Part shown: piece by piece, positions 1 to 61,990 of the stretch
Position numbering within the stretch: position 1 is the first letter of the stretch
How the letters are laid out: every line of letters begins with the position of its first letter
IMG/VR virus record: IMGVR_UViG_3300045961_000282
Coordinates: 62,001 to 126,000 of that record
Reading direction: 5' to 3' (one strand)
DNA length: 64,000 bases
Notes under the pieces: model-generated
The model's input: only the letters and a program-made list of their open reading frames with translations
Told to the model about the DNA's origin: nothing
The model's database searches: none
Translations under genes and position numbers: made by a program

Positions 1-1741
1 CGCTGGTCTCGAACGAAACCCTTCCCATCGCCCATGCTTCGGGATCGGCCCGGTTGGTCAATACCAGCGCGATCTGGTTCGCCAACTCCGCCGGGCGGTA
101 CCCGACAGGAACGGTACACAGGACATTGTTGACGTTCCTACCTGTCGTCAACGCCGCGCCCGTCCTACGGAACAGGGCGGAGAAGATGACGATCTGCCCA
201 ACCCGAGTTACCTTCGCTGCCGCATAGGCGCCCCAGTCTGGGGCATACGCACACTCGACCGTGCCCTTGCCTGCCATTTCGTCGGCGTACGCCTTGGTGG
301 CCGCATCCTCAGCCACCGAGGGGGTCGCCACTTGGAGTTGGACGAGGTTGCCAAACCCTCCATCCTTGACCTGCATCCGGTTGTTCGACCCCAGACCAAT
401 GGTTTGGAAGGACACGCCCGGCTTGTGGAACCGAATCCTCGGGTCGGCCGCGTTCTGCACCTCGAAGCCCAGTTGGGCAGTGTTGGTCAACTGCCCAGAC
501 ATCGTGTCGCCAGTTTCGTTGACCTTACCTGCCAGTGCGGTGGAAACCGCATTCTGACTGGGCGCCTGATCGGTGATGGAGCCCGGAGACATGGAATTGA
601 TAACTCTGCCGTTGGCATAGGCCTTTGAGGCGTTGACACTCATTGCCCTGTCGGTCTCAGATCCTGCCGAAGTGTTCAGGATTTTTCCGTCGACATATCC
701 CTTAGTGGCAATTCCAAGATTCGTGGTTGGACTTCCGACAATTTCAATAAGACCAGTTTGATTGCTGATTCTCAAAGCATCGGTGGCCGACGCATAGTCC
801 TTGCGCCACAGCCGGAACCGCACGTCGCCAGCATCTGCGCCGAGCGAGACTACCTGCGCCACCCACCCCCATCCATCGCGCGCCAACGTCAGGGCCGAAT
901 CGCCAGTGGGGGACGCGACGGCAAGGGCGTTGGCGTGGCCGCTGGCATCTGCGGTTACTTCGAGTCGAGGGGTTCTCAAAGTTCCGGTCATGCTGTCGCC
1001 ATCGACGTTGACGTACCGCAGGTCGGCCTGCTCCAAGGTCAGACCGCCGCCCGAGTCATCGTCTGTGTCGACCCAGATCTCGATGTTCGGGTCGACAGGC
1101 TGTTCTGCGTCGACCCAGACCTCTTTGACTCCGCCGCCGCTGGATGCCGTGACCGGGATCCACATGTCGTGGTCGGTGGAGTAGACGTGGGTCTTCGCGT
1201 CGCCGTGGGTGACATTGAATACCCGGATGCCGAAGACCTCGCAGGTTGCGCCGCCAAGCAACTCGATGCCGAACTCCTGCGGGGCCTTGTGCATAGAGGT
1301 CAGGGATATGGTTTGTTCCTCGTCCTGAACCTCGGCGAGTTTCCCGCTGACGACGAAACTCTGGGAGACGCGCACCTCGCCAGTCACCTTGCGTACGTCG
1401 AACTCGACGTGGATCGCGTCGCCGTCCTGCCAGCCAGAGGCGTCGTACTGCGCCCGCGCAAGGCCCTTGCTCGCAGGGCCAGTCAGGCGCACCACTCCGC
1501 CGCCCAGAGTCGTCAGAGCGACAGAGTCATAGCCGAATCCAAAGTTCAGTCTCCACTGGGTGGCGTTGGCGCCCCAGCCTGCAGTGATCAGGTTCGGCGC
1601 GATGGGTTCGATCCACACCATGCCCGCGGCGTAGAACTCCGGCGCGCTGGTGCCCACGTAGGGCTCGGCTCCGGCATCCCCCGTCGACACGAGGGGAATC
1701 CACTGGTCCGTGACGGGATCGCGGTACCACAGTTTCGCCAT
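1..1741 (-). CDS. Tail fibre / receptor-binding protein, 3'-truncated by the window edge
   Basis: Absent from the ORF track, consistent with no stop inside the window. Translated by hand at both ends: ATG at 1741 gives MAKLWYRDPVTDQWIPL..., and the frame is open near base 1 with the fibre motif DAATKAYAD and a C-terminal ...LCTVPVGYRP... typical of fibre tip domains. GGAGG lies upstream. Confidence 0.8.
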   Translation of the reverse strand, partial: MAKLWYRDPVTDQWIPLVSTGDAGAEPYVGTSAPEFYAAGMVWIEPIAPNLITAGWGANATQWRLNFGFGYDSVALTTLGGGVVRLTGPASKGLARAQYDASGWQDGDAIHVEFDVRKVTGEVRVSQSFVVSGKLAEVQDEEQTISLTSMHKAPQEFGIELLGGATCEVFGIRVFNVTHGDAKTHVYSTDHDMWIPVTASSGGGVKEVWVDAEQPVDPNIEIWVDTDDDSGGGLTLEQADLRYVNVDGDSMTGTLRTPRLEVTADASGHANALAVASPTGDSALTLARDGWGWVAQVVSLGADAGDVRFRLWRKDYASATDALRISNQTGLIEIVGSPTTNLGIATKGYVDGKILNTSAGSETDRAMSVNASKAYANGRVINSMSPGSITDQAPSQNAVSTALAGKVNETGDTMSGQLTNTAQLGFEVQNAADPRIRFHKPGVSFQTIGLGSNNRMQVKDGGFGNLVQLQVATPSVAEDAATKAYADEMAGKGTVECAYAPDWGAYAAAKVTRVGQIVIFSALFRRTGAALTTGRNVNNVLCTVPVGYRPAELANQIALVLTNRADPEAWAMGRVSFETS

Positions 1742-1822
1742 CAGGTGGGCTCCGATCCTCCAGTTCTGCCGCTCACCGCAGGGTATCGACGCCCACCGCT
1801 GCGGCGGCCCTCAAAACGCGAA

Positions 1823-2584
1823 TCAGCCGTTCAGCGGCACCCACCGCGTGCCGTTCCATGCCTTGGCATCCGAGCGCCAGCGGGTGCCGTTCCACATCTG
1901 GATCGGGTCCATCGCAACCCATGCAGAGCCGTTCCATGTCTTTGCTTCAGACTTGTCCTCGGGAACCTGTTGAGGCCCGGCCCATGTCGAGCCGGTGCCG
2001 TCCCAGAACATGTACACGTCGTCGATCCACGTCGTGGCTCCCGCCAGTTTGGTGAAGCGCAGCACCTCGGTGGAGGTATGGGTGCCGGTCAGAGGGGCAG
2101 CGCCCCCGTAGGGATTCTTGGCATTCACCCACTCCGTCCCGTCCACCCGAACGATCGCCTGCCCGACGTCCTTGCCGCCCGGCTTGAAGTAGACCTCGAT
2201 GTAGTGCCACTTGTTGAGGGTCAGCGTGTTCGTGGACGTGCCCCAGATCAAGAGTTGCGCGGTGTCACGCACCCGTATCTGCCCGGTCTGGGTGAGGCCC
2301 AGTGCGATGTCGGGGTTCGCCGTCGGGAACACCGCGAGAGCGCTGTTGACGACCGTCGTCGCCGAACCATACTTGAGAGCGAACCCCGCCCGCACCGAGC
2401 CCGAGCGGGCTCGTCCCTGCGCTGATATGGCGCGAAATGGGACGGTCGAGAGCGTTGCCCCGAAGAACTGCAAACACTTTCCCGTCCTGCCCGCGTCGAT
2501 GACGGAGAGGCCCGTGGCGGCGTCTACCCACGTGGGAGCAGAGTCCTGTGCGATGTTCGCACAGTTCCACAAGTAGTCAGTCAT
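1823..2584 (-). CDS. Putative fibre-tip adhesin (ConA/LamG-like beta-sandwich plus C-terminal triple WNGxxW repeat)
   Basis: 253 aa. LNKWHYIEVY...AIVRVDG...WIDDVY is a lectin-like pattern; it ends WNGSAWV-WNGTRW-WNGTRWV. Confidence 0.65.
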   Translation of the reverse strand: MTDYLWNCANIAQDSAPTWVDAATGLSVIDAGRTGKCLQFFGATLSTVPFRAISAQGRARSGSVRAGFALKYGSATTVVNSALAVFPTANPDIALGLTQTGQIRVRDTAQLLIWGTSTNTLTLNKWHYIEVYFKPGGKDVGQAIVRVDGTEWVNAKNPYGGAAPLTGTHTSTEVLRFTKLAGATTWIDDVYMFWDGTGSTWAGPQQVPEDKSEAKTWNGSAWVAMDPIQMWNGTRWRSDAKAWNGTRWVPLNG

Positions 2585-2587
2585 GGC

Positions 2588-14511: not shown

Positions 14512-15249
14512 CTACAGCGGCGTCGGCGGGCTGGGGGCCTGCAGGCCCGGGGTCGTGGTGATCGGGCCGTAGTCGTCGACCCCGAGGATCGCGATGCCGA
14601 ACTCCGCGGGCACCAGATCGCGGATGGCCCACTTGTTTGGCTCCACCTCGACGCCGCGGGTGAACACCATCGGGTACACGTCGGGCGGCACCGGCTCAAG
14701 GGCGTCGATGTAGAGGTCGGGGTCGTAGACCACGTGGTCGAAGCCGATCCACCCGGTCAGTGGAACGTTCTGCGACGGGCGGGCGATGACGTCGGCGTAG
14801 ATGACGTGCTGCGTCCGGGTGGTTCCATCGATGTCGACGTATGGTTCGCTCTGCAGGAACGGCTGGACGTCCACCCGCACCACGCCCGGCGCGCCGCCGA
14901 CGCTGGAGCACGGGGCCAACGTGCTGACCCACGCCCGGTAGGTGGTGCCGTTGCCCAGCGGGGCGCACAGCCCCGGCAACCGCAGCACTGTCGTGCCGTT
15001 GGCCACGGACCCCGGGAACTGCACGCGCCCGCGCAACTCGATGCGCCCGTCGTTGAGTTTGCGCCACGCAGGCTCGCCGCCGTCCAGTTCGCTGGCGCCC
15101 GGGATCAGGGTCTGCACCCCGCGCCGCCACGCCCGCCGCCCGGTGCCGCGCTCGCGCGACTCGGCCTCGCTGAGGCGGCGCTCCAAGCGGTCGATGTGAT
15201 CCTCAAGGGTGATGGGGGAGATGGGCCCACCGATCATGCCGCCGCTCAT
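14512..15249 (-). CDS. Minor tail protein
   Basis: ATGA-coupled. N-terminal coiled coil IDRLERRLSEAE followed by a GRIELRG...VLRLP..AP beta domain. Confidence 0.65.
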   Translation of the reverse strand: MSGGMIGGPISPITLEDHIDRLERRLSEAESRERGTGRRAWRRGVQTLIPGASELDGGEPAWRKLNDGRIELRGRVQFPGSVANGTTVLRLPGLCAPLGNGTTYRAWVSTLAPCSSVGGAPGVVRVDVQPFLQSEPYVDIDGTTRTQHVIYADVIARPSQNVPLTGWIGFDHVVYDPDLYIDALEPVPPDVYPMVFTRGVEVEPNKWAIRDLVPAEFGIAILGVDDYGPITTTPGLQAPSPPTPL

Positions 15250-40002: not shown

Positions 40003-40030
40003 ATCGTATGGCTCGAACCATACGCGTCAA
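40003..40030 (-). promoter_or_regulatory. SigA-like promoter for the capsid genes with an embedded palindrome
   Basis: TTGACG-16 nt-TACGAT on the minus strand. Inverted repeat CGTATGG-N6-CCATACG at 40005-40024. Confidence 0.65.
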
Positions 40031-52000: not shown

Positions 52001-55000
52001 CCTGCCAGTAGCGCTGGACGTTGGGGCGCGCCCCGGACAGCGCCTCAGTGATGCCGGACAACTGATCCGCATAAGGCTGCTGCCGCCACCCTGCAGAGTC
52101 GGTGGCCCGCTCCGCCGAAACCTGCGCCTCCTGCGGGGTGACCGTCGGCGCGGCGTCGGGCTCGTCTCCCGCGTCGGCCATCTGCATCGCCTGCGCGTAG
52201 GCGTCCAGCGCCGCAGGATCGGCGTCCTGCCCTTGCGCGTTGGCCTCCAGCGCCGCGTTCGTCGCGGGGTCGTTGCGCACCGCCTCGGCCGCGTCGGCCT
52301 CGGAGAGGGCGGTTTCCACGTGGCGGGTGGTGGATTCGTCCATCCCCGCCTCGCGCGCCACCTGTGCAACAGACTCACGGGTCGGCTCGGGGGTACTGGC
52401 CTCTGGGGTCGCAGAAACAGCCCCTCGGGGCCCTTCGCCCAACAGCGCATCCGCATACTCGGCACTATCGCTGCCTGCGAGGTCGTTCAAGAACTCGTCG
52501 ACGTTGCCATCGTGCTCATCCATGAGGTTGCGCACGAGCGCATTGCGTTGCCGCTGCGTCAGCGAGTCCCACTGATCCACCGCGTCGCTGATTGCGCCTT
52601 CCGCGCGCAGGTTGATCGGATCTTCGTCCTCGATCGGCGCGACCTCTGCGGCGGGCGCCTGCTGCGCCCCGGTGCGTTCGCGCCGTCGCCGCTCCCGCTG
52701 CAGGTCGCGGCGGTCGCGATTGATCTGGCGCTGCCAGTCGCGTGCCGCTGCCCGGCGCTCGGCCCGGTACTGCCGCGCCGCCCGGCGCTCGGCGGCCAGC
52801 CGTCGGCGCTCGCGGGCCTTGGGCTGGTTGCGCCGGTCGATGCGCGTGCGCGGGTATCCGGCCTTGCGCAGCATGCTGCCGATCCGGCGGCTCTGTGCAC
52901 GGGCCTTGCGGGCGGCGTTGACCTCACCAAGCGCCTCGGCCTCGGCGGCCCAGTCGCTCAACGCCTGCTGCATGTCGGCCAGCGCCTGCGCTGCGGCATC
53001 CTCGTCGCCGTTGGCGAGGGCTTCGCTGTACCGACCGCGCGCGTCATCGAGCCGCGAAGTCGCTCCGCCCGAACGCTCCTCGATCTGCCGCTTCGTCTCC
53101 GCGAGGTACTCGGCGTCCTCGGCGAAGTCGAAGTTGTCGTTGGGGTTACGACCAACCGCCGGGTTCTCGCCCAGCGGCACCCGTGGCGGCCCGTTCTGCT
53201 CGGCCTGCTCCCGGGCAGCGGCAATGTCAGCCGCTTCTTCGAGGGTGTCCGCGGCGTCGTCGAGGGCCCCGGCGACGTTGTCGCTGTCCTGAGCCGCAAT
53301 GGCGCCGTCGTCCACAGCGTTGGCGGCGTCCGACAGGCTGTGGCTGTCGGCGTCGGGGCGGATCGAGCCGTCGTCGCTGACCACCGAGTTGATGGCATCG
53401 CGAGCCGCCTGAACCTCGGGACGCGCGGCAACCTCGGGCTCGGCCTCGACGGCGTCCTCGACGTTGAACAGCGCCATCTGGTTGAGGTCATCGGCTTCGG
53501 CGTCGAACTCGGTGTTCAGCCACGCCCCGCGCGCGTCGTCTTCCTCGGCATCGAAATCTGCGTCGTGCTGGCGCAGGAAGTCGGCCAACTCGGTCCGCAG
53601 CGGGCCCATATGGTTCCGAAGGCCACGCCACGCAGCGAAGTCGTCATCCTCGATGTCATCGAGGCGGGACATCATGCTGTCGATGGTTCCGACGGCTGCG
53701 CGGATGTTGCGGATCGTGTCGTCGCCACTTCCGGCGTCTGCTAGCGCGAGGAAGTCGCTGATCCGACGCATCCGCTCACGCAGGTAGTCATGCGTGAGTT
53801 CGTCGGGGAAGGCGTTGATGGCGTCGCCGATCAAGCCAACCCCGTTGGCCGCGTCGTCGATGTCGATCAGTTGCTCCATCAGGTCGCCCTGAGAAAGGCC
53901 CTGCCATGCACCCATCGCACCTTCGGCGGCCAGATCGGGAAGGACCTCCAGACCCGACTCCTCCAGCGCCTGCAGTTCCTCGTTGCTCAGGCCCTCGGGG
54001 GCGCCAGCGATGTCGACCAGATTCCCGTCGGCGTCATACTCGACCTCGATGCGATCGCCGGGGGACAGTTCGGTTCCGGGCCACTGGCTGGACCAGCCCA
54101 AGGGCACCTCGAAGTAGCGGCGGCCCGGGGCGGGGCGAGCCTCGGCCTCGGGGGCCTCGCCTGCCGTCACCTCTTCGTGGCTGACGATCCGCCCGTCGCG
54201 GCGGACCACCCGGAAGGTCCTGCCGCTTTCGGCTCCCCGGTACGGGTACACCGTGGTGATCTCGCCATCGGGGGTGCGCTGGGTTTCCAGCCACCCGCTG
54301 ATCTCCTCGCCGTCCGGGGTGCGGTAGTTCCCAGTCATTCCCTGAACTGGGCGCTGCTCTTCGGGGGCTTCGGGGATTTCGGCGCGCGGCTCCTCCTCGG
54401 GAATCTCGGCCCGCACCCCCTCGGGGGCCTCTTCATCGACCTCTTCAAGATCCGTCGACTCGAAGGTAGCCAGATCCAGCGTCCGTCGGGCACCGCGCTC
54501 GCGGGCCGCGGCCTCAGCCGCCTCGGGGGTGTCGTAGACGTCGACGATGTCGGCGACGACCTCTCCGGTGTCGGGGTCGACGACGAACGCGACATGCGCG
54601 CCGTTCTCGCCGCTCAACTCCTCCCAGTTGTCGTCGATGAACGTCGCCGCATTGGCCCGCTGGAACTCCGCGAACTGGAACCGCCGCTCATTGCCGCGGG
54701 CAACCGCGATGCCGGACTCGGGGAAAGCCCCCTCGGCGGGGTCGAACGCGACGCCCTGCCGCTCATCGAAGGCACGAATGACGTGCTCGACTGCATCGTT
54801 GGGAACCATATCCTCGTCGGCGTTGACCCGGAGGTGCCTGCGGTGCCGGTCGAGACGCTGGCGGAACTTGCGGTCGGTCTCCTCCTGCTTGGCCCGCTGG
54901 GCCTCAAGGTCGAACGGCTCGACGCCGCGCTCGATGCCGCCGTCGACCGCAGCCTTGAGGATGGCGACCATGTCCTCGACGTCGGTGTCGGCGTGGTGCT

Positions 55001-57938
55001 CGCCCGTGCGGTCGATGCCGTAGAACCGGCGCATCGTGTCCATCTTGTCGTTGCGCGGAACTCCCTCGCCCCGACCGCGCAGGTTCTCGCCATGGAGCGC
55101 GCGGAACACCGGAAGGGTGTCGAGGATGCCGCCCTCAGGCATCCAATCCTGTCCGCCGGTCACACCCAAGTCGCGCAAGCGCTGCCGGATCGGCTCAAGG
55201 TCGACCCCCTCGGACTCCCCTGCGCGAGACGGGTTCATCACCGCGTCGATCATGTCGCGCAGCATCGAGGTGTCGAAGGCGGCGTTCTGCGCCACCACCA
55301 TGTCGGGCCCGATGAACTCGACCATCTCGGGCAGGACTTCCTGCCACGGGCGTTCCTGCGATGCCTCCTCGTCGGTGATGCCGTGAACCTGCTGAGCGAA
55401 CGGGTTGCTCGGCTTCCCGGGGTTCATCCTGAAGACGCGGCGATCGACCTCTTCGCCGTTCTCGAAGCGGATCAGCGCAGCGGAGACGGGGCGGTCTGGA
55501 AGGTCCATGCCCTCGGCGTCGGCCTGCATCCGCTCGCCCGCAAGGCCAGTGGTCTCCAAGTCGAAGCCGACCAAGGATCCATTGTTGATCCGGTCACGCA
55601 GCGCTTCGAGCGAAACAGTCCCATCCTCGTTCTGAATGCCAGCGGCCCGTCCCTGCAGGGCGGGGAACGTGCGGCCGGGCAGGAAGGGCTCCTTCAACTT
55701 GCCACGGACGAACTGCTTGCTCGGCAGCCGCTCGCTGGCCCGCTTGCCAAGGATGCGGGCAGTCTCCACCAAACCCGCAGCGGCGTCGCTGACGTCAACC
55801 GCGAGCCTGCTGTCGTCGCCACCCGACAACCGACGGCGCAGGGCGGCCCGCTGCACGGCGGTGGCCGCGTTGGCAACATCCTTGGCCCACTTGCCGAGAT
55901 CGCTCTCGCGCGCCTCGCTGTCGGCGTCGACTGCGCGCAGGGCGGCCACGGCGTCGGCTGCGTCGGGGTTGTCGGCCACGAACCCGTCGAGCAGCCCGTC
56001 GAGGTTGTCGTAGGCCATGTCGAAGTTGCGCCGCGCCGGGGCGGTGATGTTCTCTAGCCGCTTGTGCATGTCGCGGCTGTCGCGCGCGAACGTCTCCACC
56101 ATGCCTGCGCGCTCTTGAACGCCTGCCGCAACGTCGCGGCGGGCACGATCCTCAGCGGAAACTAGCGCACTGGGCTGCCCGTCGATCTCCGCGATGCGCC
56201 GCTCGGCGGCCTTGCGGGCCCGGTTTGCGGCCAGAGCGGCGCGGTCGAAGACCGTGCTGCGCATCGCCAGCGGCTCGATCTCACCGGACTCGATGTTGCG
56301 CGCCATTGCCTCAAGGGCATTGACATCCTCGGGGCCCAGCGCGTCGACAGTGTCCGGGTCGGTGATCAGCGCCCGGGCGTCGGCGACAGCGTCGTCCGAA
56401 CCATACGGCGAGGTCTCGGGGGCGGCCTCCGGCTCCGACTCGGGAATCTCCGCGACGACCTCGGGCTCGGGGGCTACTTCACCGGCATCCCCGACGCCCT
56501 CAGCGCCTCGGTCACCCTCTGCAGAAACTGCTCCTTCGTCTCCCCCGGGTTCGGCTTCATCAGCACCGGCTGGGGCTGCGCCTTCGGGGCCTTCTCCTCG
56601 TCCACCTTCTTCTCCCTCTGGTTGTGGCTCGGGGGCCGCCGGGGCCTCGGCTTCGGGGGCTTCCTGCGGCTCGGTCGTGGCCCGCTGCTCCGGGCGCGTG
56701 AATGCCCGGATCGTATCCTCGCGGCCACCTGATCCGGCGGCCACGCCGATCTCGTCGATGCGCTCCTGAATGTCCGCAGGCTGGTCCTCGCGGGCGTCGC
56801 GCAGAGCGCGGCGCAGGTTCTCGCGGCGGTCGTCGCCGGGGTCGTTGAGCAGGCCGACGATGGCGTCAGCGACCTTGTTGCGCTGGTCGAAGTCGGGATC
56901 AACGGGGGCGAGGCTGCGGAACAGATCCACCGCCTGTTGCGCCAGCGCGTCATCCCCTTCCTCGGTGGGGATGTCCATCCGGTCGGCGACCTCGCGCAAC
57001 TGGCGGCCGAGGTCGCGGCCCTGCGCGAAGGCGAAGTTCCCGCGCTCGAAGTCATCGGCGATGCGTCGCAGGTTGTCGGCCGCGAACGGATCGACGATCC
57101 CGTCCGCGTTCCTCGCGATGGCCTTGTCGGCGATCTGCAGTGCCCGGGCGAAGCGGTCCTTCTGTCCTGCCGGGGCCATCCGCTGGCGCCGCTTGGCGCC
57201 CTCCATCAGGCGGTTGAGTTCCCGCACCTGCTGCTGCCCGAGCGGCTCGCCGCGCGCGCCCGATCCGTCCCATTTCTCGTAGTCCCCGCCGATCAGGTCC
57301 TCGGGGTCGTTCTCGCCGAGGGCCTCGGCATCATTCGGGTTGTCCGGCAGTTGGGCCCGCCCGCCCGCCTTGGTCCCGGGGTCGGAAACGATCTCCAACT
57401 GGTCCGGGGACAGGCGCACAAACCGCGTCTCGCCGGGCTGCAGGTCATCGGGAACCCCGATTCCCATGCTCTCGATGTCGTCGTTGGTCGGATCACCGCC
57501 GCGCCCGAGATCATTTACTCGGGTGCTGATTTCAACAACAACGTCTTCATTGTTGTTCAATGCGCCCGCAATTCGCCCGTAGGCAACCGCGTCGCGACCA
57601 TCGGGGCGCTTGAAGACGGAGACGATCTGGAACGTCGCCTCTTCCTCGCCGTTCTCGTTGCGCACCCAGTTGGGCTGCTTGCGCCGCCGCGGGCCGATGT
57701 ACTTGAGGAACCGGCCCTTGCGGTCACGCAGCCAGTAGATCTCCTTGAAGTCCGCAATCAGCGCAAGGACCGCGCCGGGCAACGCCCCGCGGCCGACGAA
57801 CTGGGAATCCGTCCCGTAGAAATCGAGGATGTCGAACTCGGTCGCCAGCGGCGGCAGGCCGATCTCCTTCCGTGCCGCGTTGGTGCTTGCGACCATCGAA
57901 TCGAAGCCGAAAACCGGCGAGCGGTCGTCAGAGTGCAC
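46008..57938 (-). CDS. Giant polyvalent head-associated protein (DEDDh 3'-5' exonuclease, wHTH pair, SH3-like, two GNAT-like domains)
   Basis: 3976 aa open frame, GTG start after AGGAG. FDLETTG...HGIT...VAQNAAFD...LDTL...HHADTD (DnaQ-like, ~54950-55590); VQNTGLAG...HANISVGGYAWATAGF (GNAT-like, ~46230-46680). Confidence 0.85.
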   Translation of the reverse strand: MHSDDRSPVFGFDSMVASTNAARKEIGLPPLATEFDILDFYGTDSQFVGRGALPGAVLALIADFKEIYWLRDRKGRFLKYIGPRRRKQPNWVRNENGEEEATFQIVSVFKRPDGRDAVAYGRIAGALNNNEDVVVEISTRVNDLGRGGDPTNDDIESMGIGVPDDLQPGETRFVRLSPDQLEIVSDPGTKAGGRAQLPDNPNDAEALGENDPEDLIGGDYEKWDGSGARGEPLGQQQVRELNRLMEGAKRRQRMAPAGQKDRFARALQIADKAIARNADGIVDPFAADNLRRIADDFERGNFAFAQGRDLGRQLREVADRMDIPTEEGDDALAQQAVDLFRSLAPVDPDFDQRNKVADAIVGLLNDPGDDRRENLRRALRDAREDQPADIQERIDEIGVAAGSGGREDTIRAFTRPEQRATTEPQEAPEAEAPAAPEPQPEGEEGGRGEGPEGAAPAGADEAEPGGDEGAVSAEGDRGAEGVGDAGEVAPEPEVVAEIPESEPEAAPETSPYGSDDAVADARALITDPDTVDALGPEDVNALEAMARNIESGEIEPLAMRSTVFDRAALAANRARKAAERRIAEIDGQPSALVSAEDRARRDVAAGVQERAGMVETFARDSRDMHKRLENITAPARRNFDMAYDNLDGLLDGFVADNPDAADAVAALRAVDADSEARESDLGKWAKDVANAATAVQRAALRRRLSGGDDSRLAVDVSDAAAGLVETARILGKRASERLPSKQFVRGKLKEPFLPGRTFPALQGRAAGIQNEDGTVSLEALRDRINNGSLVGFDLETTGLAGERMQADAEGMDLPDRPVSAALIRFENGEEVDRRVFRMNPGKPSNPFAQQVHGITDEEASQERPWQEVLPEMVEFIGPDMVVAQNAAFDTSMLRDMIDAVMNPSRAGESEGVDLEPIRQRLRDLGVTGGQDWMPEGGILDTLPVFRALHGENLRGRGEGVPRNDKMDTMRRFYGIDRTGEHHADTDVEDMVAILKAAVDGGIERGVEPFDLEAQRAKQEETDRKFRQRLDRHRRHLRVNADEDMVPNDAVEHVIRAFDERQGVAFDPAEGAFPESGIAVARGNERRFQFAEFQRANAATFIDDNWEELSGENGAHVAFVVDPDTGEVVADIVDVYDTPEAAEAAARERGARRTLDLATFESTDLEEVDEEAPEGVRAEIPEEEPRAEIPEAPEEQRPVQGMTGNYRTPDGEEISGWLETQRTPDGEITTVYPYRGAESGRTFRVVRRDGRIVSHEEVTAGEAPEAEARPAPGRRYFEVPLGWSSQWPGTELSPGDRIEVEYDADGNLVDIAGAPEGLSNEELQALEESGLEVLPDLAAEGAMGAWQGLSQGDLMEQLIDIDDAANGVGLIGDAINAFPDELTHDYLRERMRRISDFLALADAGSGDDTIRNIRAAVGTIDSMMSRLDDIEDDDFAAWRGLRNHMGPLRTELADFLRQHDADFDAEEDDARGAWLNTEFDAEADDLNQMALFNVEDAVEAEPEVAARPEVQAARDAINSVVSDDGSIRPDADSHSLSDAANAVDDGAIAAQDSDNVAGALDDAADTLEEAADIAAAREQAEQNGPPRVPLGENPAVGRNPNDNFDFAEDAEYLAETKRQIEERSGGATSRLDDARGRYSEALANGDEDAAAQALADMQQALSDWAAEAEALGEVNAARKARAQSRRIGSMLRKAGYPRTRIDRRNQPKARERRRLAAERRAARQYRAERRAAARDWQRQINRDRRDLQRERRRRERTGAQQAPAAEVAPIEDEDPINLRAEGAISDAVDQWDSLTQRQRNALVRNLMDEHDGNVDEFLNDLAGSDSAEYADALLGEGPRGAVSATPEASTPEPTRESVAQVAREAGMDESTTRHVETALSEADAAEAVRNDPATNAALEANAQGQDADPAALDAYAQAMQMADAGDEPDAAPTVTPQEAQVSAERATDSAGWRQQPYADQLSGITEALSGARPNVQRYWQELVDSIGDLSEPLGTRRANRGRANRLLFASRHFTQEANGAFSAADRVSLLEASARADALLNRYLDDYPQVSLENYTREQADATSEWIESGNRILQTPEGDPDGYWYMDDYMDEADYSSSVDSLQSVADRLNGLAGDPRFLTSQQVQAAINVAQRDLNRLLRGDLGPATNFDREAVLERVINRLNRAASRSGDNADLAQLRDELLDIRHRAHGRSLSDTSWDMDDEAISGSIAALIRYMGRGSEAGSALIFAKKAFGDALNAEPGSAKRWAALMRARNALDLVHATELRGLMNAARVRVNPDRLRNLDDPTFRLADDNLAPSRPTARGASWTDAEIASISDEVTRQRALVAELGEGQEADARRKAANSFALARRAYRAGQFGEFEAFYSLGLSRLSQAGDADAVRRMMALRDSHWGDNDWAAAAADTRSRVANIMGGLPTNMSVSPRDPAKATAHRHRQNARATLAAALQLPDGSAEQRIMFDAALWRLRQAGDARDAELRDALAVWDPNGDVRDAMPDRRDPNDGVPGLPVSAPGSAEIARAQQFAAALRDYLAVTPEFVATYGNMNMARAQGMLDRLVDAGVLSRIDIGDSMARYGYGAGAANLTDAEIADQIVRAYAQSESVGLDIASVDSNVAQAVDALVGQNGVVNWDLTEIRGMFPQWSDDEVQRVLRVLERAGVLHEMDPESIEDLRNSGADIRPGERLWENPAVDGAISDADIVRMVREELSRGQAPQDRPTPEEPPAPEPEAAPEAPEAPEAPEEPTAPEAPEAPEPEAPEAQPQVDYSDLISEATGILEAQGVPADLRRMGQRAVDALRNGDGATARNILTDVIDSLAYGDYRRSVAVGLRDRIDSRMRVGSNQPQPEATVPESTTPEAPPVDFTEKADQIDELAQSVFADTADADVSTVLQSAATALRDGDAATARDQLERASAALLNNAGLGSSFEGYDPDRADAVNLAYASIRDAMGGIGEVQQPSGYSATSRRNSAKAAIDQAAASDGVSEAERSALQVASRAIDGGDLVGANGILRNLMVARRERGQTVPPGLVAANSSLMQIAINRYGDDLTGVMESVDPDAARAYRTGISAANGLSSPTMLYAARHEVNMQALAVVERIALDPATPMQQRREALFAMRTLQDEMDVERVRQAQVNALVDSDGQLVRRPTSGTDGVVTDGGGNGLVVGDTVRMGYGSSAQSAVVLGTEPEPGTNAAASWGYVTVRDLRTGEVRRERGYDLSLAQSSPLVADPVRYFGTSGINASFSPADSDALRSRHGAGEAARIMHIGQSAPSIANLADSSVPDAVREQLFADLLSNPEFRGIQSIDSIELTPTGGRIAVTLQPRGRAENGGKFTLQIDRSGDLPPTVRVGIDPGTSQSVRLAQQEALKAAERHAIANGATSLQIVDAPPSARLTAANSGFDWDVIAMGGFDSTKDIVRAMLARAARDSGDDEAAQAIIADMVRDLEDATDLEGLPTPFEIASLASVNRTNLGAAALRSRSWVPVRELNGPSVMSRRAEQIKKREIQQLVAQFNPLGHDFERAGAATRLDDMTADNSTRALRAVAEATQISDRPGAPALAMVVTSSPIRDRNGNINYEFREFVSEADQSKPLGETGFSIGNYNQLRELQKALSSYAGDGSSSFDFSLMRSYARGATILDSDGNVASIEDLWNAVGQNVKKLSDAFGSARKAYGEKALAELHQVGSSGLQLTAPQILEASRWIVDMDAASTSDIADALRRAKVGDDAISQALNADSPSELAQAIERQRENVLRDMPRVGNGYVTVQNTSIYAAYMIMDNDVQNTGLAGQLVKQTSDWSILNGIKHYDVHANISVGGYAWATAGFGWKSDPLGQARYLMSSIQRHLRTDKDRADFAAIQERMQNTSPSDENFPTPFELSQIGYDPADESGQPWAGKKGMLGNSWQGRKNLRRDRLYTLVENYYTEKMMRRMERMRRKAEAQRGGSGPAAPAAPAPQVPEGEVPEGAVPEAGAPAGGGASGGVV
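56474..56605 (-). CDS. Nested 43-aa gene in the +1 frame of the giant gene
   Basis: AGGGAG-N6-GTG start; MDEEKAPKAQPQPVLMKPNPGETKEQFLQRVTEALRASGMPVK then TAG. Host-frame codons become A/T-ending over exactly this interval. Confidence 0.65.
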   Translation of the reverse strand: MDEEKAPKAQPQPVLMKPNPGETKEQFLQRVTEALRASGMPVK

Positions 57939-58473
57939 CAGACTCTCCTGTCGTACCGTTGCTGTTCGTCATGCCGTCACGCTGTGCTTCACAGATGTTT
58001 GAGAGTAATGCGTCGAACTGATCCGCCGAAGGCATTTCCGCGATCCCCTGCTCGGCGTCAAAGCGACGCACCATCGAATCCGCCCACCGCTTGCCCGGGT
58101 CGCCGCCCCAAAGCAGCCACGCCACGTAGCCCGGGGTCTCCGAGCCCTTCTTGGCCCAGTCGGGTTTGCGGTCCACCGCGTGCCGGGCGAAGTACGCATG
58201 CATCTTCCGTATGGTTTCCCGACTACATGACTGCCCCGCAGCCAACTGCTTGCCGCGCGCCCGGCCGACGTCGGTCAGGTTCTTTCCGCCGCGGCCCTCC
58301 TTGAGCAGGTCGAGGCCGCGCTGCGCAGCCTTCTGCACGTCCTTCGGCGGGGCGTAGGTGTCGCTGGCCGCCGCCGTGATGGGCGCTACGGCTGCCAGTG
58401 GGGCGCCGATCTTGGCCATCATCCGCCGCCGCAGGTCGTCGCTGCCGATCTGGTAGCCGGTCTGGCTGGTCAT
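57928..58473 (-). CDS. Head-associated protein (WLLWGGDPGxxWA family)
   Basis: ATGA-coupled to the portal. PPKDVQKAAQRGL...VGRARGKQLA...TIRKMHAYFARH...VAWLLWGGDPGKRWA. Confidence 0.75.
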   Translation of the reverse strand: MTSQTGYQIGSDDLRRRMMAKIGAPLAAVAPITAAASDTYAPPKDVQKAAQRGLDLLKEGRGGKNLTDVGRARGKQLAAGQSCSRETIRKMHAYFARHAVDRKPDWAKKGSETPGYVAWLLWGGDPGKRWADSMVRRFDAEQGIAEMPSADQFDALLSNICEAQRDGMTNSNGTTGESGAL

Positions 58474-60215
58474 CGAACCCTCCGCAAACCATACTCATCG
58501 GGCATCGGGATCGATGTGTCCGTCGGGATCCTCTTGCGCAGTTGCTCCGGCTGCTGCGGTGGCGCCTCTTCCTCAGGAACCTCCTCCGGCTCCGGCGCGG
58601 CGGGGCCCTGCCCAACCTCCGGCAGCGGCAGGCCCTCAAGGACTTCCGGTGGCAGCGGGGCGGCCCCTTCGCCCGGGGCGGGCATCTGGCCGGTCTCCAG
58701 CAGGCTCTGCAGGTTCTCCGGCATCGGCGTCTTGGCCCCGGCGATGTTCTGCTCGCGTACCTCGCCCAGCAGGTCGGGGGCGATCCGCTGGTAGACCGAC
58801 TCGGCGAACTCGCCTGCGATCTGTCCGCGGCTGACGGTGATGCGCTTGATCAACTCATCGCCGCTGGGGGCGTCGGTCTCGGCAAAGCCGTGCGCCGAGC
58901 GCCACGCGCTGCCGGACAACAGGTAGCGATCCCATCCATCGGAGGCGCTCTGTGCCCGGTCGGCCGAGGTGAGGATGTCCGACGGGTCGTACCAGACGAC
59001 GATCTTCTCGGCAATGTCCGGGTCAACGCCCTTGGCAATCAGGGCGGGCCGCATGAACATTGCAGTCAGGGCGTCGCAGAGCAGCAACGTCATGGGCTCG
59101 ATGTGCCCGCGGTACATGGTCTGGTTGATCTGCACCGCGTTGCTGTACTTGACGTTGGCCAAGCCGGTCACGACGTCCTTGGGCACATCGACGCCCTGCA
59201 GGATCCGCTCCAGAACCCGGTCGGCGCGCTCAGCCAGCGCAGCATCGAAGGACCGCTCGAAACTGAAGTGCCTGATCTGGGAACCCAACTCACCGGGGCC
59301 GCGGATGAGCAGCGGAACCACGGCGCTGGCCGATTCCTCGTCGGCGATGGGAGTCGTCATCGCGGCCATCAGTTCGGCTTCGAAGGAGTCGGCATCCTCC
59401 TCGAAGGAGCCGTCCTCGTTGACCACATCCGGCGCGGCGGCGACACTCAGGCCGTCTGGGACGAACAGTGCGCCCGCGTTGAGCCGCGATTTCGCCGTGG
59501 CCCGCACGGTGCGGTTGAGCAGCAGCAGTTCCTCACACAGTTGCAGCAGGGCCCGCATCGAGGAGTCGGCCTCGTCGTGGAACCGCGCGTGGGGCCGCCA
59601 GATCCGTCCCACGAACGCGCTGGACTCCAGCGGCTTGATTCCTTGGGTGCCCATCGAGCGAGCGGTCTGGACCGAGATCTTCCCGTTGTTGTCGACCTGC
59701 ACCTCGTCGATCGACCGGATCGTCCACTTCTCTGGAACCGTTCCATCAATGGAGGGCAACTGCTGGACCAGATAGCACTCGCCTGCGACCGAGAGGTTGA
59801 TGGAGGCGTCGGCGATCATCCCGGGGATGCCGCCGTGGCAGGACTGCAGTCGGTTGAGTTGGTTGTGCGCGAGGGCGACGACGTCCTCGTCGAGCGCAGG
59901 TACGTCCGACAGCGTCGACGGGGGATCGGAGGGCTCAGCGACGTAGGCGACATGAAGCCGCATTCGCGACATCAGGGCCGCGACCAGCATGAAGGCGTAC
60001 TTGATCTCCCCGATGCTGTCGTAATACTCCCACGCCTCGGACTGCCACGCCGACGTGGCGCCCTTGCGCTTCTTCAACTGCTCCAGTTCGCCGCGATCGG
60101 TGATCTTCATCCGCGCGGCGGCGGCGACCAACGGGCGGGGGGCGTTGAAGGGCAATGCCTCGGCGCGCTCGACCCCGGCGGGCAGGGGCTCGGGGGCCCT
60201 GCTGAAGACGCCCAT
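58470..60215 (-). CDS. Portal protein
   Basis: TGATG-coupled MGVFSRA. AWQSEAWEYYDSIGEIKYA, NLSVAGECYL, RIWRPH.R...EADS, SRLNAG and SASAVVP motifs of actinophage portals. Confidence 0.9.
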   Translation of the reverse strand: MGVFSRAPEPLPAGVERAEALPFNAPRPLVAAAARMKITDRGELEQLKKRKGATSAWQSEAWEYYDSIGEIKYAFMLVAALMSRMRLHVAYVAEPSDPPSTLSDVPALDEDVVALAHNQLNRLQSCHGGIPGMIADASINLSVAGECYLVQQLPSIDGTVPEKWTIRSIDEVQVDNNGKISVQTARSMGTQGIKPLESSAFVGRIWRPHARFHDEADSSMRALLQLCEELLLLNRTVRATAKSRLNAGALFVPDGLSVAAAPDVVNEDGSFEEDADSFEAELMAAMTTPIADEESASAVVPLLIRGPGELGSQIRHFSFERSFDAALAERADRVLERILQGVDVPKDVVTGLANVKYSNAVQINQTMYRGHIEPMTLLLCDALTAMFMRPALIAKGVDPDIAEKIVVWYDPSDILTSADRAQSASDGWDRYLLSGSAWRSAHGFAETDAPSGDELIKRITVSRGQIAGEFAESVYQRIAPDLLGEVREQNIAGAKTPMPENLQSLLETGQMPAPGEGAAPLPPEVLEGLPLPEVGQGPAAPEPEEVPEEEAPPQQPEQLRKRIPTDTSIPMPDEYGLRRVR

Positions 60216-61434: not shown

Positions 61435-61888
61435 CCGCGCGCTCCTGCGCCTCGGCGACGATCTGGCTCCACGGCTTGCCGATCCGCAGTCGGATGGTGG
61501 CCACCGACGGTGCGCGCTTGCCCTCCTTGCGCCGGGCGTCGATCCACGTGGTGAACGCGGCCAGTGACTTCCCCTCGCCGCTGCGCACCCACTGCGCCAC
61601 CCAGTCGAGGCACTCATTGGCGGTCCACTTGGGCTTCGGTCCGTTGAGGGACTTCGCCGCCTGCTCCTCGGAGATGCCCGCCGACACGCGCGCTTCGTTC
61701 CATGTGCGCCACGTGTAGGGCACGATGGCGGTGGAGGAGGGGATCCCCTTGCGGTCGGCCGGGGGGATCAGGTCGCGCCACGCGCGATAGGACACCGCCG
61801 ATGGGACCTGCCCGGTCTCCTTGAGGCACAATCGAAGCGATTTGATCGCCCGACTTTCCAAAGATTCCTGAACGGCCGCATGTGACAT
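61427..61888 (-). CDS. Homing-endonuclease-associated repeat (HNH_repeat-like) DNA-binding protein
   Basis: Two repeats: G.VPS...Y..W...PSS..I....TWNEA...AG and KWT..EC...PSVATI..R.G..W. Confidence 0.65.
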   Translation of the reverse strand: MSHAAVQESLESRAIKSLRLCLKETGQVPSAVSYRAWRDLIPPADRKGIPSSTAIVPYTWRTWNEARVSAGISEEQAAKSLNGPKPKWTANECLDWVAQWVRSGEGKSLAAFTTWIDARRKEGKRAPSVATIRLRIGKPWSQIVAEAQERAGA

Positions 61889-61894
61889 GGTGGA

Positions 61895-61903
61895 ATCATA
61901 GCA
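61895..61903 (-). promoter_or_regulatory. Extended -10 (TGcTATGAT) for a leaderless transcript
   Basis: TATGAT ends 6 nt before the ATG at 61888; no RBS present. Confidence 0.6.
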
Positions 61904-61990
61904 AACAAAACTAACCACGGACGGGAAGCAGCGGGGGTATGGTTCACGTCAGTGACGCACGACGTTCCCCGAGCCGATGGAGCACCTGCG

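What the first reader, a model, noticed from the sequence alone, without database searches (positions are those of the whole stretch)
1306..61944. Dispersed, strongly over-represented octamer RTATGGTT written through coding frames and onto promoters
Seen, by hand count (may be incomplete): GTATGGTT on the minus strand at 2365, 13896, 17155, 25743, 32102, 34488, 40016, 44506, 49830, 56399, 58487, 60808, and on the plus strand at 14839, 22890, 58209, 61937. ATATGGTT at 27171, 47625, 54804 (minus) and 1306, 35621, 53608 (plus). That is about 22 sites, against about 1 expected from a rough mononucleotide model at ~67% GC. Inside genes it occurs in different frames (TAT GGT TCG = YGS; CGT/AGT/GAT ATG GTT = RMV/SMV/DMV) using codons rare in this genome, so selection appears to act on the DNA rather than the protein. 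Four copies are intergenic at promoters: capsid, tail chaperone, HTH gene, and 61937. Two of these share the 12-mer GTATGGTTCACG. It is absent from the variable fibre block at 2.4-13.9 kb. Inference: a genome-wide protein-binding code, comparable to mycobacteriophage stoperators or KOPS/Chi-like oriented sites. Candidate readers are the HTH at 60546, whose own -10 it overlaps, the RHH-wHTH at 11634, or the wHTH pair of the giant protein.
Basis: partly seen in the sequence, partly recalled or inferred. Interest (0 to 1): 0.82.

Follow-up and report, generated by a model that had tools for sequence, protein, structure and literature searches.

The report
Genome-wide promoter-like word in a phage
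A large uncultivated phage of actinobacteria has written one short promoter-like DNA word (RTATGGTT) about 75 times through its genes and spacers, mostly on the coding strand and using rare codons, while removing nearly all other promoter-like hexamers from its genes. This points to a dedicated transcription signal, not chance.

Summary
All 22 sites are real: 0.46 are expected from dinucleotide shuffles, and 11 sense plus 5 antisense sites lie in genes against about 0.4 each after synonymous-codon shuffles. The window is part of a 206-kb, 66% GC, actinophage-like siphovirus contig. It carries 75 RTATGGTT sites (85 with the core TATGGTT), the top k-mer at k=6-10, about one per 2.75 kb.

The word fits the actinobacterial -10 hexamer TANNNT plus T, with no -35. 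24% of all peptide contexts that can encode it in sense do so. Orientation follows individual genes (40 sense, 8 antisense). It is again the top 7-mer in two relatives and enriched in a third, partly at orthologous positions with the same rare codons. All other TANNNT hexamers are about 4-fold depleted in genes on both strands.

Two sites sit 6-7 nt before leaderless start codons, one of them the terminase. A relative has TAGGGT at that spot.

Best reading (about 0.5): the core of a phage-specific, -35-less promoter class. Main rival (about 0.27): a stoperator-like operator. It is supported by the strict sequence, by the capsid-gene copy lying inside a canonical promoter's spacer, and by antisense copies in the structural region. 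Chi/KOPS-like readings are rejected. No reader protein was identified and no RNA data exist.

The parts
1306..1313 (+). ATATGGTT, antisense inside a minus-strand 608-aa gene that runs over the window start
2365..2372 (-). GTATGGTT, sense, 24 nt inside my called start of gene 1823-2395(-); it may lie upstream of the true start
13896..13903 (-). GTATGGTT, sense in gene 12994-14496(-), read as TAT GGT TCC
14839..14846 (+). GTATGGTT, antisense in gene 14512-15249(-)
17155..17162 (-). GTATGGTT, sense in the Dit-like tail gene 16727-18532(-)
22890..22897 (+). GTATGGTT, antisense in the tape-measure gene 18529-24867(-)
25743..25750 (-). GTATGGTT, intergenic, 86 nt upstream of gene 25249-25656(-), which sits in the tail-chaperone position
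27171..27178 (-). ATATGGTT, sense in the small gene 27081-27278(-)
32102..32109 (-). GTATGGTT, sense in gene 31785-32558(-), read as TAT GGT TCG; relative L003 has TGG GGT GGG here
34488..34495 (-). GTATGGTT, intergenic, 107 nt upstream of gene 33511-34380(-); part of an imperfect palindrome AAACCAT-n8-ATGGTTT
35621..35628 (+). ATATGGTT, antisense in gene 35319-35909(-)
40016..40023 (-). GTATGGTT, intergenic, 194 nt upstream of the major capsid gene 37824-39821(-); present at the orthologous place in relatives L003 and L004
40002..40030 (-). Canonical-looking promoter TTGACG-N16-TACGAT whose spacer holds the 40016 word. It is the only TTGACn-N16-18-TAnnnT match in the structural region. A degenerate inverted copy GAACCACA follows the TACGAT hexamer.
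39822..40015 (-). Roughly 190-nt leader between the word and the capsid start codon. It is strongly conserved in L003 and L004, and largely recognisable in L042. Sequence upstream of the word is not conserved.
44506..44513 (-). GTATGGTT, sense in the 408-aa gene 43957-45183(-), read as agT ATG GTT; kept in L003 and L004 as cgT ATG GTT
47625..47632 (-). ATATGGTT, sense in the giant ORF, read as gaT ATG GTT = D-M-V; L003 encodes the same D-M-V as gaC ATG GTG, without the word
49830..49837 (-). GTATGGTT, sense in the giant ORF 46008-57938(-)
53608..53615 (+). ATATGGTT, antisense in the giant ORF
54804..54811 (-). ATATGGTT, sense in the giant ORF
56399..56406 (-). GTATGGTT, sense in the giant ORF
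58209..58216 (+). GTATGGTT, antisense in gene 57928-58473(-)
58487..58494 (-). GTATGGTT, sense, at the 3' end of the portal gene 58470-60215(-), 14 nt before the next gene's start codon
60808..60815 (-). GTATGGTT, intergenic, between tRNA-Leu (60862-60937, minus) and the 72-aa HTH gene, 43 nt before its ATG
61937..61944 (+). GTATGGTT, intergenic, 46 nt upstream of plus-strand ORF 61991-62233, in a divergent control region

Best explanation
RTATGGTT(C) is the core of a phage-specific, -35-less promoter class. TATGGT is a -10 hexamer of the actinobacterial TANNNT type, followed by the T that this phage's canonical promoters also carry. It is read on the non-template strand by sigma-type recognition. 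The phage has placed it about every 2.75 kb. It uses spacers where they exist and otherwise writes it into coding sequence on the sense strand through rare synonymous codons. Transcription can then start or restart along tightly packed operons. These include the roughly 66-kb structural region, which has no extended -10 promoters of the canonical class. All other -10-like hexamers have been purged from the genes, so this one word is the only licensed start signal inside them. Shown: enrichment, codon-level selection, gene-level orientation, conservation in relatives, -10 anatomy and leaderless geometry, and purging of other TANNNT hexamers. Inferred: that transcripts start at the sites, who reads them, and when.
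For: (1) TATGGTT occurs 85 times against 4.65 expected (Markov-3) and is the top k-mer at k=6-10. Only S-R-TATGGTT-C-(G) is informative, and there is no -35. (2) Changes at T1, A2, T6 or T7 abolish the enrichment. The same T-A-n-n-n-T-T skeleton is seen in the phage's canonical promoters (GATTTGAC-N17-gTGcTAnnnTT). All 44 TGnTAnnnTT copies are intergenic. (3) Synonymous shuffles give 40 sense against 2.96 expected and 8 antisense against 1.98. 40 of 165 compatible peptide contexts carry the word in sense, against 8 of 150 in antisense. All 6 sites in genes that oppose their arm follow the gene. (4) Other TANNNT hexamers are specifically depleted in genes on both strands: observed/expected 0.26 and 0.24, against 0.72 for TA alone and 0.8-0.9 for TAnnnC and TAnnnG. 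TATGGT makes up 43 of the 138 sense-strand TANNNT hexamers in coding DNA. In mycobacteria TANNNT alone, without a -35, is the dominant promoter determinant, and new TANNNT hexamers create new transcription starts (PMC3898074, PMC6728331). (5) Leaderless geometry: TATGGT-7 nt-ATG at the terminase gene, and TATGGT-6 nt-ATG at a 48-aa CxxC...CxxC ORF. In relative L036 (terminase 73% identical) the terminase ATG is preceded by TAGGGT-6 nt instead. (6) It is the top 7-mer in L003 (8 against 0.85) and L004 (6 against 0.40), and occurs 4 times in the 13 kb of L036. Several sites are orthologous and keep the same rare codons, such as cgT ATG GTT and gaT ATG GTT. (7) Upstream of the capsid gene, conservation begins at the word and runs through the leader. 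(8) A WhiB-like gene points to an actinobacterial host.
Against: The three middle bases and both flanks are fixed. Only TATGGTT and TATTGTT are enriched in genes, which is more specific than plain sigma-A recognition needs. No sigma region 2, no RNA-polymerase catalytic motif and no other reader was found. Intragenic sense sites show no tendency to lie close to the next gene start. Antisense copies are also enriched. There are 6 in the structural region against about 0.7 expected (my scaling of the genome-wide 1.98 by coding length; measured for the window's genes as 5 against 0.39). In L003 and L004 there are 5 against 1.3, and one is positionally conserved between those two. The capsid-gene copy lies inside the spacer of a canonical-looking TTGACG-N16-TACGAT promoter, with a partly conserved inverted copy just after that hexamer. 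A fourth relative (L042) has a plain TTGACA-N16-TAGTCT promoter there and no word. Two perfect palindromes AACCATAC-GnG-ATATGGTT exist at 187.75 and 205.54 kb. There are no transcript data.
Confidence: 0.5

Rival explanations
1. Stoperator-like operator. A phage-encoded, probably monomeric, DNA-binding regulator binds the asymmetric word. It represses promoters that contain it and blocks elongating polymerase at the dispersed copies in an orientation-dependent way. On this reading the -10 look of the word is a legacy of an operator that overlaps a -10. The L5 stoperator similarly contains a -35-like TTGACA on its complement (my own reading of the published consensus).
For: All 9-10 positions are specific. 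Density (1 per 2.75 kb), asymmetry and co-orientation with transcription match the published description of stoperators (PMC3029335 and PMC9283540). Site positions turn over between relatives while density is maintained. The capsid-promoter copy lies in the spacer, with an inverted partner after the -10 that is perfect in L004. There are two perfect palindromes. In the right arm many copies sit just after hairpins or terminators and ahead of the next canonical promoter. Candidate HTH proteins exist, including a two-HTH 200-aa protein next to a cluster of three sites.
Against: No tyrosine or serine integrase and no ParA or ParB was found, so there is no sign of lysogeny. Roughly half the sites are intragenic, whereas stoperators are mainly intergenic. 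Only 11 of 44 canonical promoters have a site within 300 nt, and none is overlapped as an operator would be. The same word is kept in relatives that are 27-35% diverged in protein sequence, whereas immunity specificities diverge fast. This model would have to tolerate about 40 -10-like hexamers in genes of a genome that purges all others. No repressor homologue was identified.
Confidence: 0.27
2. A signal read during elongation, not initiation. One option is a -10-like non-template-strand element that re-engages sigma or a NusG/RfaH-like factor, giving pausing or antitermination. The other is the RNA word UAUGGUU read in the transcript by an RNA-binding protein or nuclease.
For: Strict sense-strand bias outside the structural region (27 sense to 2 antisense). 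Even spacing without regard to gene starts. The compact 9-10-nt size matches the strand exposed in a transcription bubble (inference).
Against: Other TANNNT hexamers are depleted equally on both strands, which fits avoidance of initiation rather than of pausing. The leaderless geometry, and TAGGGT standing before the orthologous terminase start in L036, are initiation features. Antisense copies are enriched in the structural region. No RNA family or conserved structure is associated with the sites. Cleavage sites inside genes would be costly.
Confidence: 0.1
3. Mark or target linked to the phage's own DNA enzymes. For example, AACCATAY would be the asymmetric site of the phage-encoded MmeI-like type IIL restriction-modification enzyme, or of the N6/N4 methyltransferase, and would be used as a self mark.
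For: The genome encodes an 840-aa MmeI-family enzyme and a separate N6_N4 methyltransferase. MmeI-family sites are asymmetric, 6-8 bp long, and carry an A at the penultimate position (own knowledge). AACCATAC fits that.
Against: Restriction targets are normally avoided, not enriched 25-fold or more. The A-type copies (AACCATAT) do not fit the usual ...AC or ...AG ending. Methylation has no reason to follow the orientation of single genes. Nothing links the enzyme to the sites.
Confidence: 0.04
4. Chi-, KOPS- or primase-type polar signal tied to DNA ends, replication or packaging.
For: It is an over-represented oriented 8-mer. At the scale of genome arms the left part is mostly minus and the right part mostly plus.
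Against: Orientation tracks individual genes. All 6 intragenic sites in genes that oppose their arm follow the gene, and the minus-strand gene island at 167.9-171.1 kb carries three minus sites. The word is about 4-fold denser in spacers than in genes. Its critical positions are those of a -10 hexamer.
Confidence: 0.03
5. Compositional, codon-usage or repeated-peptide artefact.
For: None beyond the general risk with short motifs.
Against: Dinucleotide, Markov-3, codon-order and synonymous shuffles all fail to reproduce the count. The word is used in three frames with different peptides. It recurs in independent metagenomic relatives.
Confidence: 0.01

Closest known systems
Actinobacterial sigma-A promoters defined by a -10 TANNNT alone, often driving leaderless mRNAs (M. 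tuberculosis TSS maps, PMC3898074)
   Same: The hexamer fits TANNNT. There is no -35. S-R bases precede it. Some copies sit 6-7 nt before a start codon, as in leaderless genes.
   Different: Here one exact hexamer plus its flanks is used about 75 times, half of them inside genes, while all other TANNNT hexamers are purged. The S-R prefix is one position closer to the hexamer than the published S-R-N prefix.
Phage T4 late promoters (TATAAATA, read by the phage sigma gp55; own knowledge; PMC1524935 listed but not read)
   Same: A short, nearly invariant -10-like word without a -35, repeated many times over a large lytic genome and present ahead of structural genes.
   Different: No gp55-like or sigma-70 region 2 protein was detected. 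The host is a GC-rich actinobacterium. Massive embedding in coding sequence by codon choice has not, to my knowledge, been described for T4.
Stoperators of Cluster A mycobacteriophages (L5 gp71, Bxb1 gp69; PMC3029335, PMC9283540)
   Same: An asymmetric word, tens of copies across the whole genome at similar density, oriented with transcription, with some copies at promoters.
   Different: It has 9-10 informative bases, not 13. About half the copies are intragenic. No lysogeny genes or repressor homologue were found. The canonical promoters are not overlapped. The word itself is a -10 hexamer.
Promoter-specificity switching to -35-less promoters by phage factors (Thermus phage P23-45 gp39/gp76, own knowledge; sigma displacement by D29 gp53-gp52, bioRxiv 10.64898/2026.10.05.756390)
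   Same: The concept is shared: host polymerase is redirected by small phage proteins that no domain search would flag as sigma factors.
   Different: No homologue was tested or found here. The promoter word differs.
Chi and KOPS polar octamers
   Same: An over-represented, oriented octamer.
   Different: Orientation follows genes rather than replication arms or DNA ends, and the word is enriched in spacers.

Membership tests
Sigma-A type -10 promoter element (TANNNT, -35-independent) | The hexamer is T-A-n-n-n-T, with T1, A2 and T6 indispensable | tested here: met
   Single substitutions at positions 1, 2, 6 and 7 abolish the enrichment. The canonical promoters of the same genome share the TAnnnTT skeleton.
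Sigma-A type -10 promoter element (TANNNT, -35-independent) | The hexamer ends 6-8 nt before the transcription start; the proxy used is the start codon of a leaderless gene | tested here: inconclusive
   Met at the terminase gene (7 nt) and a 48-aa Zn-ribbon ORF (6 nt), and at two TGc-TATGGTT sites. In L036, TAGGGT-6 nt precedes the orthologous terminase start. It cannot be judged for the other roughly 70 sites.
Sigma-A type -10 promoter element (TANNNT, -35-independent) | Transcripts start at the site | not testable with these tools
   The only run found is one DNA metagenome kept as contigs, and no RNA run was listed.
Sigma-A type -10 promoter element (TANNNT, -35-independent) | The middle three bases are free to vary | tested here: not met
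   Inside genes only TATGGTT (40 sense) and TATTGTT (7 sense) are enriched. This implies an extra specificity factor.
T4-type late promoter system | A phage-encoded sigma reads the word | tested here: not met
   No Sigma70_r2 match at E<=0.1. There are only weak region-4-like HTH hits. No DxDGD polymerase motif is present in the large proteins. Divergent sigma mimics would escape these searches.
T4-type late promoter system | The word lies ahead of late (structural and packaging) genes | tested here: met
   Copies lie upstream of the capsid gene, the tail-chaperone-position gene, the 289-aa gene and the terminase. The structural region has none of the 44 extended -10 promoters.
Cluster A stoperators | An asymmetric site in tens of copies across the genome, oriented with transcription | tested here: met
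   75 copies. 40 sense and 8 antisense in genes, and 27 to 2 outside the structural region.
Cluster A stoperators | Sites situated primarily in short intergenic regions | tested here: not met
   48 of 85 core sites are inside my called genes, and at least two of the 'intergenic' ones lie in a WhiB-like gene that I had missed.
Cluster A stoperators | A cognate immunity repressor and a temperate life style | tested here: not met
   No Phage_integrase, Resolvase, ParA (AAA_31) or ParB_N matches. No PDB or Pfam link between the HTH candidates and the TipsytheTRex/L5 repressor. This rests on absence of detectable homologues.
Cluster A stoperators | An operator copy overlaps the early lytic promoter | tested here: not met
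   11 of 44 canonical promoters have a site within 300 nt, at no fixed offset. The capsid promoter, however, does hold a copy in its spacer.
Chi / KOPS polar sites | Orientation set by replication arm or DNA end, not by single genes | tested here: not met
   All 6 sites in genes that oppose their arm follow the gene.
Target of an MmeI-type enzyme | An asymmetric 6-8 bp site ending in A-C or A-G, usually avoided by the genome that must survive it | tested here: inconclusive
   The enzyme is present. AACCATAC fits the ending and AACCATAT does not (own knowledge of the family). The word is enriched, not avoided. Methylation could not be examined.

The most novel reading that the evidence does not exclude
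A lineage of lytic, roughly 200-kb actinobacteriophages runs whole-genome transcription on a single licensed word. Every other -10-like hexamer has been purged from the genes. One exact word has been written into about a quarter of all codon contexts that can hold it. It is read by a dedicated, still unrecognised phage factor: a minimal sigma or sigma-mimic, or an orientation-dependent roadblock protein working in a lytic cycle. That would be a new kind of phage transcription system in Actinobacteria. It would also be a clear case of regulatory code and protein code being co-written on a large scale.
Probability: 0.3. Interest if true: 0.78.

Novelty: new variant of a known kind. Interest (0 to 1): 0.62.

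Why it matters
If the word is a promoter core, it shows how a large phage with almost no spacers can drive long operons in a host where a bare TANNNT suffices for initiation. The phage would remove all accidental starts and install one controllable start signal inside its own genes. It gives a clean, quantifiable example of selection on synonymous sites for a regulatory word: 24% of possible contexts are used, and the same rare codons are kept in relatives. It also predicts an undiscovered phage factor that gives actinobacterial RNA polymerase, or a roadblock protein, a 9-10-bp specificity. Such a factor would be useful as an orthogonal expression part in GC-rich actinobacteria. If the operator reading is right instead, stoperator-type genome silencing would extend beyond temperate Cluster A mycobacteriophages to a lytic giant phage.

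Tried and rejected
- Close relatives in the phage collection (megablast) and in IMG/VR (capsid patterns): none found.
- The cultured distant relatives Arthrobacter phage Mimi and Microbacterium phage Pumpernickel (capsid about 45% identical): the word is not enriched (12 and 4 copies). Mimi's own top motif, TTTTGTAAC, belongs almost entirely to early promoters confined to its 20-kb terminal repeats. Pumpernickel's is an ordinary extended -10. More distant metagenomic relatives L040, L041 and L042 also lack the word.
- A -35 or any distal element around the sites: none.
- Inverted or direct partners within 45 nt: 8 of 85 against about 5 expected, so most sites are solitary.
- A fixed offset to canonical promoters: none.
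- A bias of intragenic sites toward the next gene start: none.
- Regular spacing: only weakly more even than random (CV 0.80, p about 0.03).
- RNA structure linking the upstream GC-box to the word: a weak fold without covariation.
- Rfam: only tRNAs.
- Literature search for the word itself: nothing relevant.
- Reader candidates: the Pfam, PHROG, PDB and Atlas searches gave generic HTH hits only.
- Sequencing runs: one DNA metagenome kept as contigs and no RNA run listed.
- Not done: a dicodon-preserving shuffle, and structure prediction of candidates.
- Caveat: gene calls are my own rough GC3/codon-model calls. They miss some small or atypical genes, such as the WhiB-like gene, so the intergenic/intragenic counts are approximate.

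Full report
**Observation**

100 dinucleotide-preserving shuffles of the window give a mean of 0.46 and a maximum of 3.

The window is bases 62001-126000 of a single 206,257-bp virus contig. The contig is 66% GC, classed as linear and estimated 99% complete. It comes from a freshwater-sediment metagenome.

The word does not stop at the window. The contig holds 75 RTATGGTT sites, about one per 2.75 kb, in every 10-kb bin. An unbiased k-mer scan against a third-order Markov model puts the 7-mer core TATGGTT (85 copies against 4.65 expected) and its extensions at the top for k=6 to 10. Aligning all copies shows information only at S-R-TATGGTT-C-(G). There is no -35 or any other distal element.

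**What the genome is**

PHROG and Pfam hits identify a major head protein, a portal, tail proteins and a 2112-aa tape measure. There is also a 3976-aa ORF between portal and capsid, in which the only recognisable domain is a DnaQ-like exonuclease.

The capsid protein is about 45% identical to those of the roughly 190-kb actinobacteriophages Arthrobacter phage Mimi and Microbacterium phage Pumpernickel, with the same gene order. A WhiB-like gene and frequent leaderless gene starts also point to an actinobacterial host.

No integrase (tyrosine or serine), ParA or ParB was found. Nor was a sigma-70 region 2 domain or an RNA-polymerase catalytic motif.

**Selection acts on the nucleotides**

I made rough gene calls with a codon model. 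I then shuffled synonymous codons within each gene, keeping every protein and each gene's codon usage.
- Genome-wide, TATGGTT occurs 40 times in sense and 8 times in antisense. The shuffles give 2.96 (maximum 7) and 1.98 (maximum 6).
- For the window's genes alone, RTATGGTT is 11 and 5 against 0.42 and 0.39.
- Of the 165 places in the proteome where the peptide would allow the word in sense (Y-G-x, x-M-V, [ILV]-W-[FL]), 40 carry it (24%). For Y-G-x the figure is 18 of 47. In antisense it is 8 of 150.
- A direct example is window 47625, which encodes D-M-V as gaT ATG GTT. Relative L003 encodes the same D-M-V as gaC ATG GTG.

**Orientation**

In genes the word follows the coding strand (40 to 8). 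It does so at the level of single genes: all 6 intragenic sites in genes that oppose their arm follow the gene. The minus-strand island at 167.9-171.1 kb in the plus-strand right arm carries three minus-strand sites. This rules out signals set by replication arms or DNA ends, such as Chi, KOPS or primase sites.

The bias is not uniform. It is 17:2 in the left region, 10:0 in the right region, and 13:6 in the structural region.

Most intergenic copies point at a downstream gene 30-200 nt away. One of a back-to-back pair points at tRNA-Cys.

**Relatives**

The word is not enriched in Mimi or Pumpernickel, nor in the more distant metagenomic relatives L040, L041 and L042.

In the closest metagenomic relatives it recurs:
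- L003: capsid 65% identical, 8 copies against 0.85 expected, the top 7-mer.
- L004: capsid 64% identical, 6 copies against 0.40 expected, the top 7-mer.
- L036: terminase 73% identical, 4 copies in 13 kb.

Some positions are orthologous:
- The site about 200 nt upstream of the capsid gene is present in all three of the window, L003 and L004.
- The x-M-V site in the 408-aa protein is present in all three, as cgT or agT ATG GTT.
- Three sites in and next to the terminase are kept in L036 with the same rare codons.
- One antisense site is shared by L003 and L004.

Other sites have turned over while density is kept.

**The word has the anatomy of a -10 hexamer**

Single substitutions at T1, A2, T6 or T7 abolish the enrichment. 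Variants in the three middle bases (TATGCTT, TAGGGTT, TAAGGTT, TATAGTT, TATGATT) exist almost only in spacers. There they are the -10 of a clear canonical promoter family, GATTTGAC-N17-gTGc-TAnnnTT followed by a CA-rich leader.

All 44 TGnTAnnnTT copies are intergenic, and none lies between 50 and 120 kb, which is the structural region. The ten TATGGTT copies that lack the R prefix mostly belong to this canonical class.

The strongest context result concerns all other TANNNT hexamers. Inside genes they are depleted about 4-fold on both strands: 95 and 78 observed against about 365 expected each. Controls are much less affected. TA alone has an observed/expected ratio of 0.72, TAnnnC 0.89, TAnnnG 0.77, and CAnnnT, GAnnnT and TGnnnT about 1.0. 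TGnTAnnnT is 0 in sense and 4 in antisense, against 17.5 and 33.5 expected. L003 and L004 show the same depletion.

In mycobacteria TANNNT, without a -35, is the dominant promoter determinant, and new TANNNT hexamers create new transcription starts (PMC3898074, PMC6728331). The phage therefore appears to purge accidental start signals while enriching one particular one. TATGGT alone is 43 of the 138 sense-strand TANNNT hexamers in coding DNA.

Two R-class copies have exact leaderless geometry. One is TATGGT-7 nt-ATG at the intein-containing terminase gene. The other is TATGGT-6 nt-ATG at a 48-aa CxxC...CxxC ORF. In L036 the terminase ATG is preceded by TAGGGT-6 nt instead, so a -10 hexamer stands before the start in both phages but is a different hexamer at a different position.

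**Points that pull toward an operator**
- The exactness of the middle bases and flanks exceeds what sigma A needs.
- Intragenic sites are not biased toward the next gene start.
- Antisense copies are enriched in the structural region and in relatives.
- The capsid-gene copy lies inside the 16-nt spacer of TTGACG-N16-TACGAT, the only canonical -35/-10 match in the structural region. A degenerate inverted copy (GAACCACA; perfect in L004) follows that hexamer.
- L042 keeps the conserved leader but has a plain TTGACA-N16-TAGTCT promoter there and no word.
- Two perfect palindromes AACCATAC-GnG-ATATGGTT lie in large spacers at 187.75 and 205.54 kb.

These features fit a protein-bound operator of the stoperator kind (PMC3029335, PMC9283540). 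Against that reading:
- There are no lysogeny genes.
- About half of the sites are intragenic.
- The word has no relation to the 44 canonical promoters.
- The identical word persists in diverged relatives.
- The model would require about 40 -10-like hexamers inside genes of a genome that removes all others.

**Verdict**

- **Best explanation (about 0.5):** a phage-specific, -35-less promoter core read by sigma-type recognition with an unidentified specificity factor.
- **Main rival (about 0.27):** a stoperator-like operator or roadblock site.
- **Minor rivals:** an elongation or RNA-level signal (about 0.1), a mark linked to the phage's MmeI-like enzyme (about 0.04), a Chi/KOPS-like signal (about 0.03), and an artefact (about 0.01).

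No transcript data exist for this uncultivated phage. The choice between initiation and roadblock therefore needs the bench tests listed under next steps.

Noticed in passing
whole contig; in the window, 42 sense and 37 antisense TANNNT hexamers in genes against about 125 and 130 expected: Generic -10-like hexamers TANNNT are about 4-fold depleted inside genes on both strands, far more than TA-containing controls. TGnTAnnnT is absent from the sense strand of all genes. Density is 8.8 per kb in spacers against 1.4 per kb in genes.
   Followed up: yes
contig 145-190 kb and 10-50 kb (outside the window); one in the window at about 61894-61903 (-): A canonical promoter family GATTTGAC-N17-gTGc-TAnnnTT followed by a CA-rich leader (accaacaccacaac...). 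All 44 TGnTAnnnTT copies are intergenic and none lies in the 50-120 kb structural region. Several sit 6 nt before start codons, giving leaderless genes.
   Followed up: partly
contig 148-200 kb; copies in the window at 49446-49455 (-) and 50715-50724 (+), inside the giant ORF: A second dispersed word, GCGCGACCGG, usually preceded by an alternating purine-pyrimidine run (gtgtgtacgcgcgc). The pattern search listed 28 exact copies, 24 of them on the plus strand between 148 and 200 kb regardless of gene strand; my own scan found a few more minus-strand copies. Eight copies lie 53-76 nt upstream of an RTATGGTT site, with CTCGAG boxes and a hairpin between. Its function is unknown.
   Followed up: partly
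contig 202.3-203.25 kb and 196.3-197.7 kb (L013:12270-13250 and L013:6300-7670): Two non-coding stretches of 1-1.4 kb, each holding three RTATGGTT copies. The first also has five CCATGTCAC repeats in 11-bp phase, an AT-rich patch and the palindrome CCAAAAGCATA-n4-TATGCTTTTGG. It looks like an origin or a control hub. A two-HTH 200-aa protein is encoded just downstream.
   Followed up: partly
window 39822-40015 (-): The roughly 190-nt leader of the major capsid gene is strongly conserved in L003 and L004 and largely recognisable in L042, whose capsid proteins are 60-65% identical. That is more conserved than the flanking sequence and may indicate a structured RNA leader. There are too few sequences to test covariation.
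   Followed up: partly
window 46008-57938 (-): A 3976-aa ORF between portal and capsid genes in which the only recognisable domain is a DnaQ/RNase T-like exonuclease (residues about 790-1000). The counterpart in Mimi (2709 aa) is annotated as a DNA helicase. It is probably a polyvalent virion or ejected protein.
   Followed up: partly
window 40131-43646 (-): A 1171-aa protein that combines an N-terminal 2'-5' RNA ligase (LigT-like) domain with a region matching PHROGs annotated as portal or head-maturation protease. The same fusion is present in L003 and L004.
   Followed up: no
contig 175704-178226 (+), L011:15704-18226: A complete-looking MmeI-family type IIL restriction-modification enzyme (N-terminal, helicase-spacer and methyltransferase domains) encoded by the phage. 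A separate N6_N4 methyltransferase lies at contig 433-1749 (-).
   Followed up: partly
contig 149588-151432 (-) and 43548-45608 (+): The terminase large subunit carries an intein. A second 686-aa protein also has an intein-splicing hit.
   Followed up: no
window 2400-13900: The tail-fibre block has lower GC (60-65%) and lacks the word over 11.5 kb. This is consistent with recent acquisition, although a gap of this size is not statistically unusual.
   Followed up: partly
window 60862-60937 (-); contig 180119-180191 (+) and 187551-187623 (-): Three tRNA genes: Leu-CAA, Trp-CCA and Cys-GCA. The Cys gene lies 130 nt downstream of the minus-strand half of a perfect back-to-back pair of the word.
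   Followed up: partly
contig 127.7-138.4 kb (L009): A cluster of host-like sugar genes: a galactose-oxidase-like protein, two family-2 glycosyltransferases and a UDP-glucose/GDP-mannose dehydrogenase.
   Followed up: no
Arthrobacter phage Mimi, 1-20 kb and 172.6-192.5 kb (L016, L024-L025): Mimi's most over-represented word, TTTTGTAAC, belongs to about 28 near-identical early promoters (GTCAAC ... TATTCAAG TTTTGTAACTA) confined to its roughly 20-kb direct terminal repeats. This is a different strategy from the genome-wide word studied here.
   Followed up: partly
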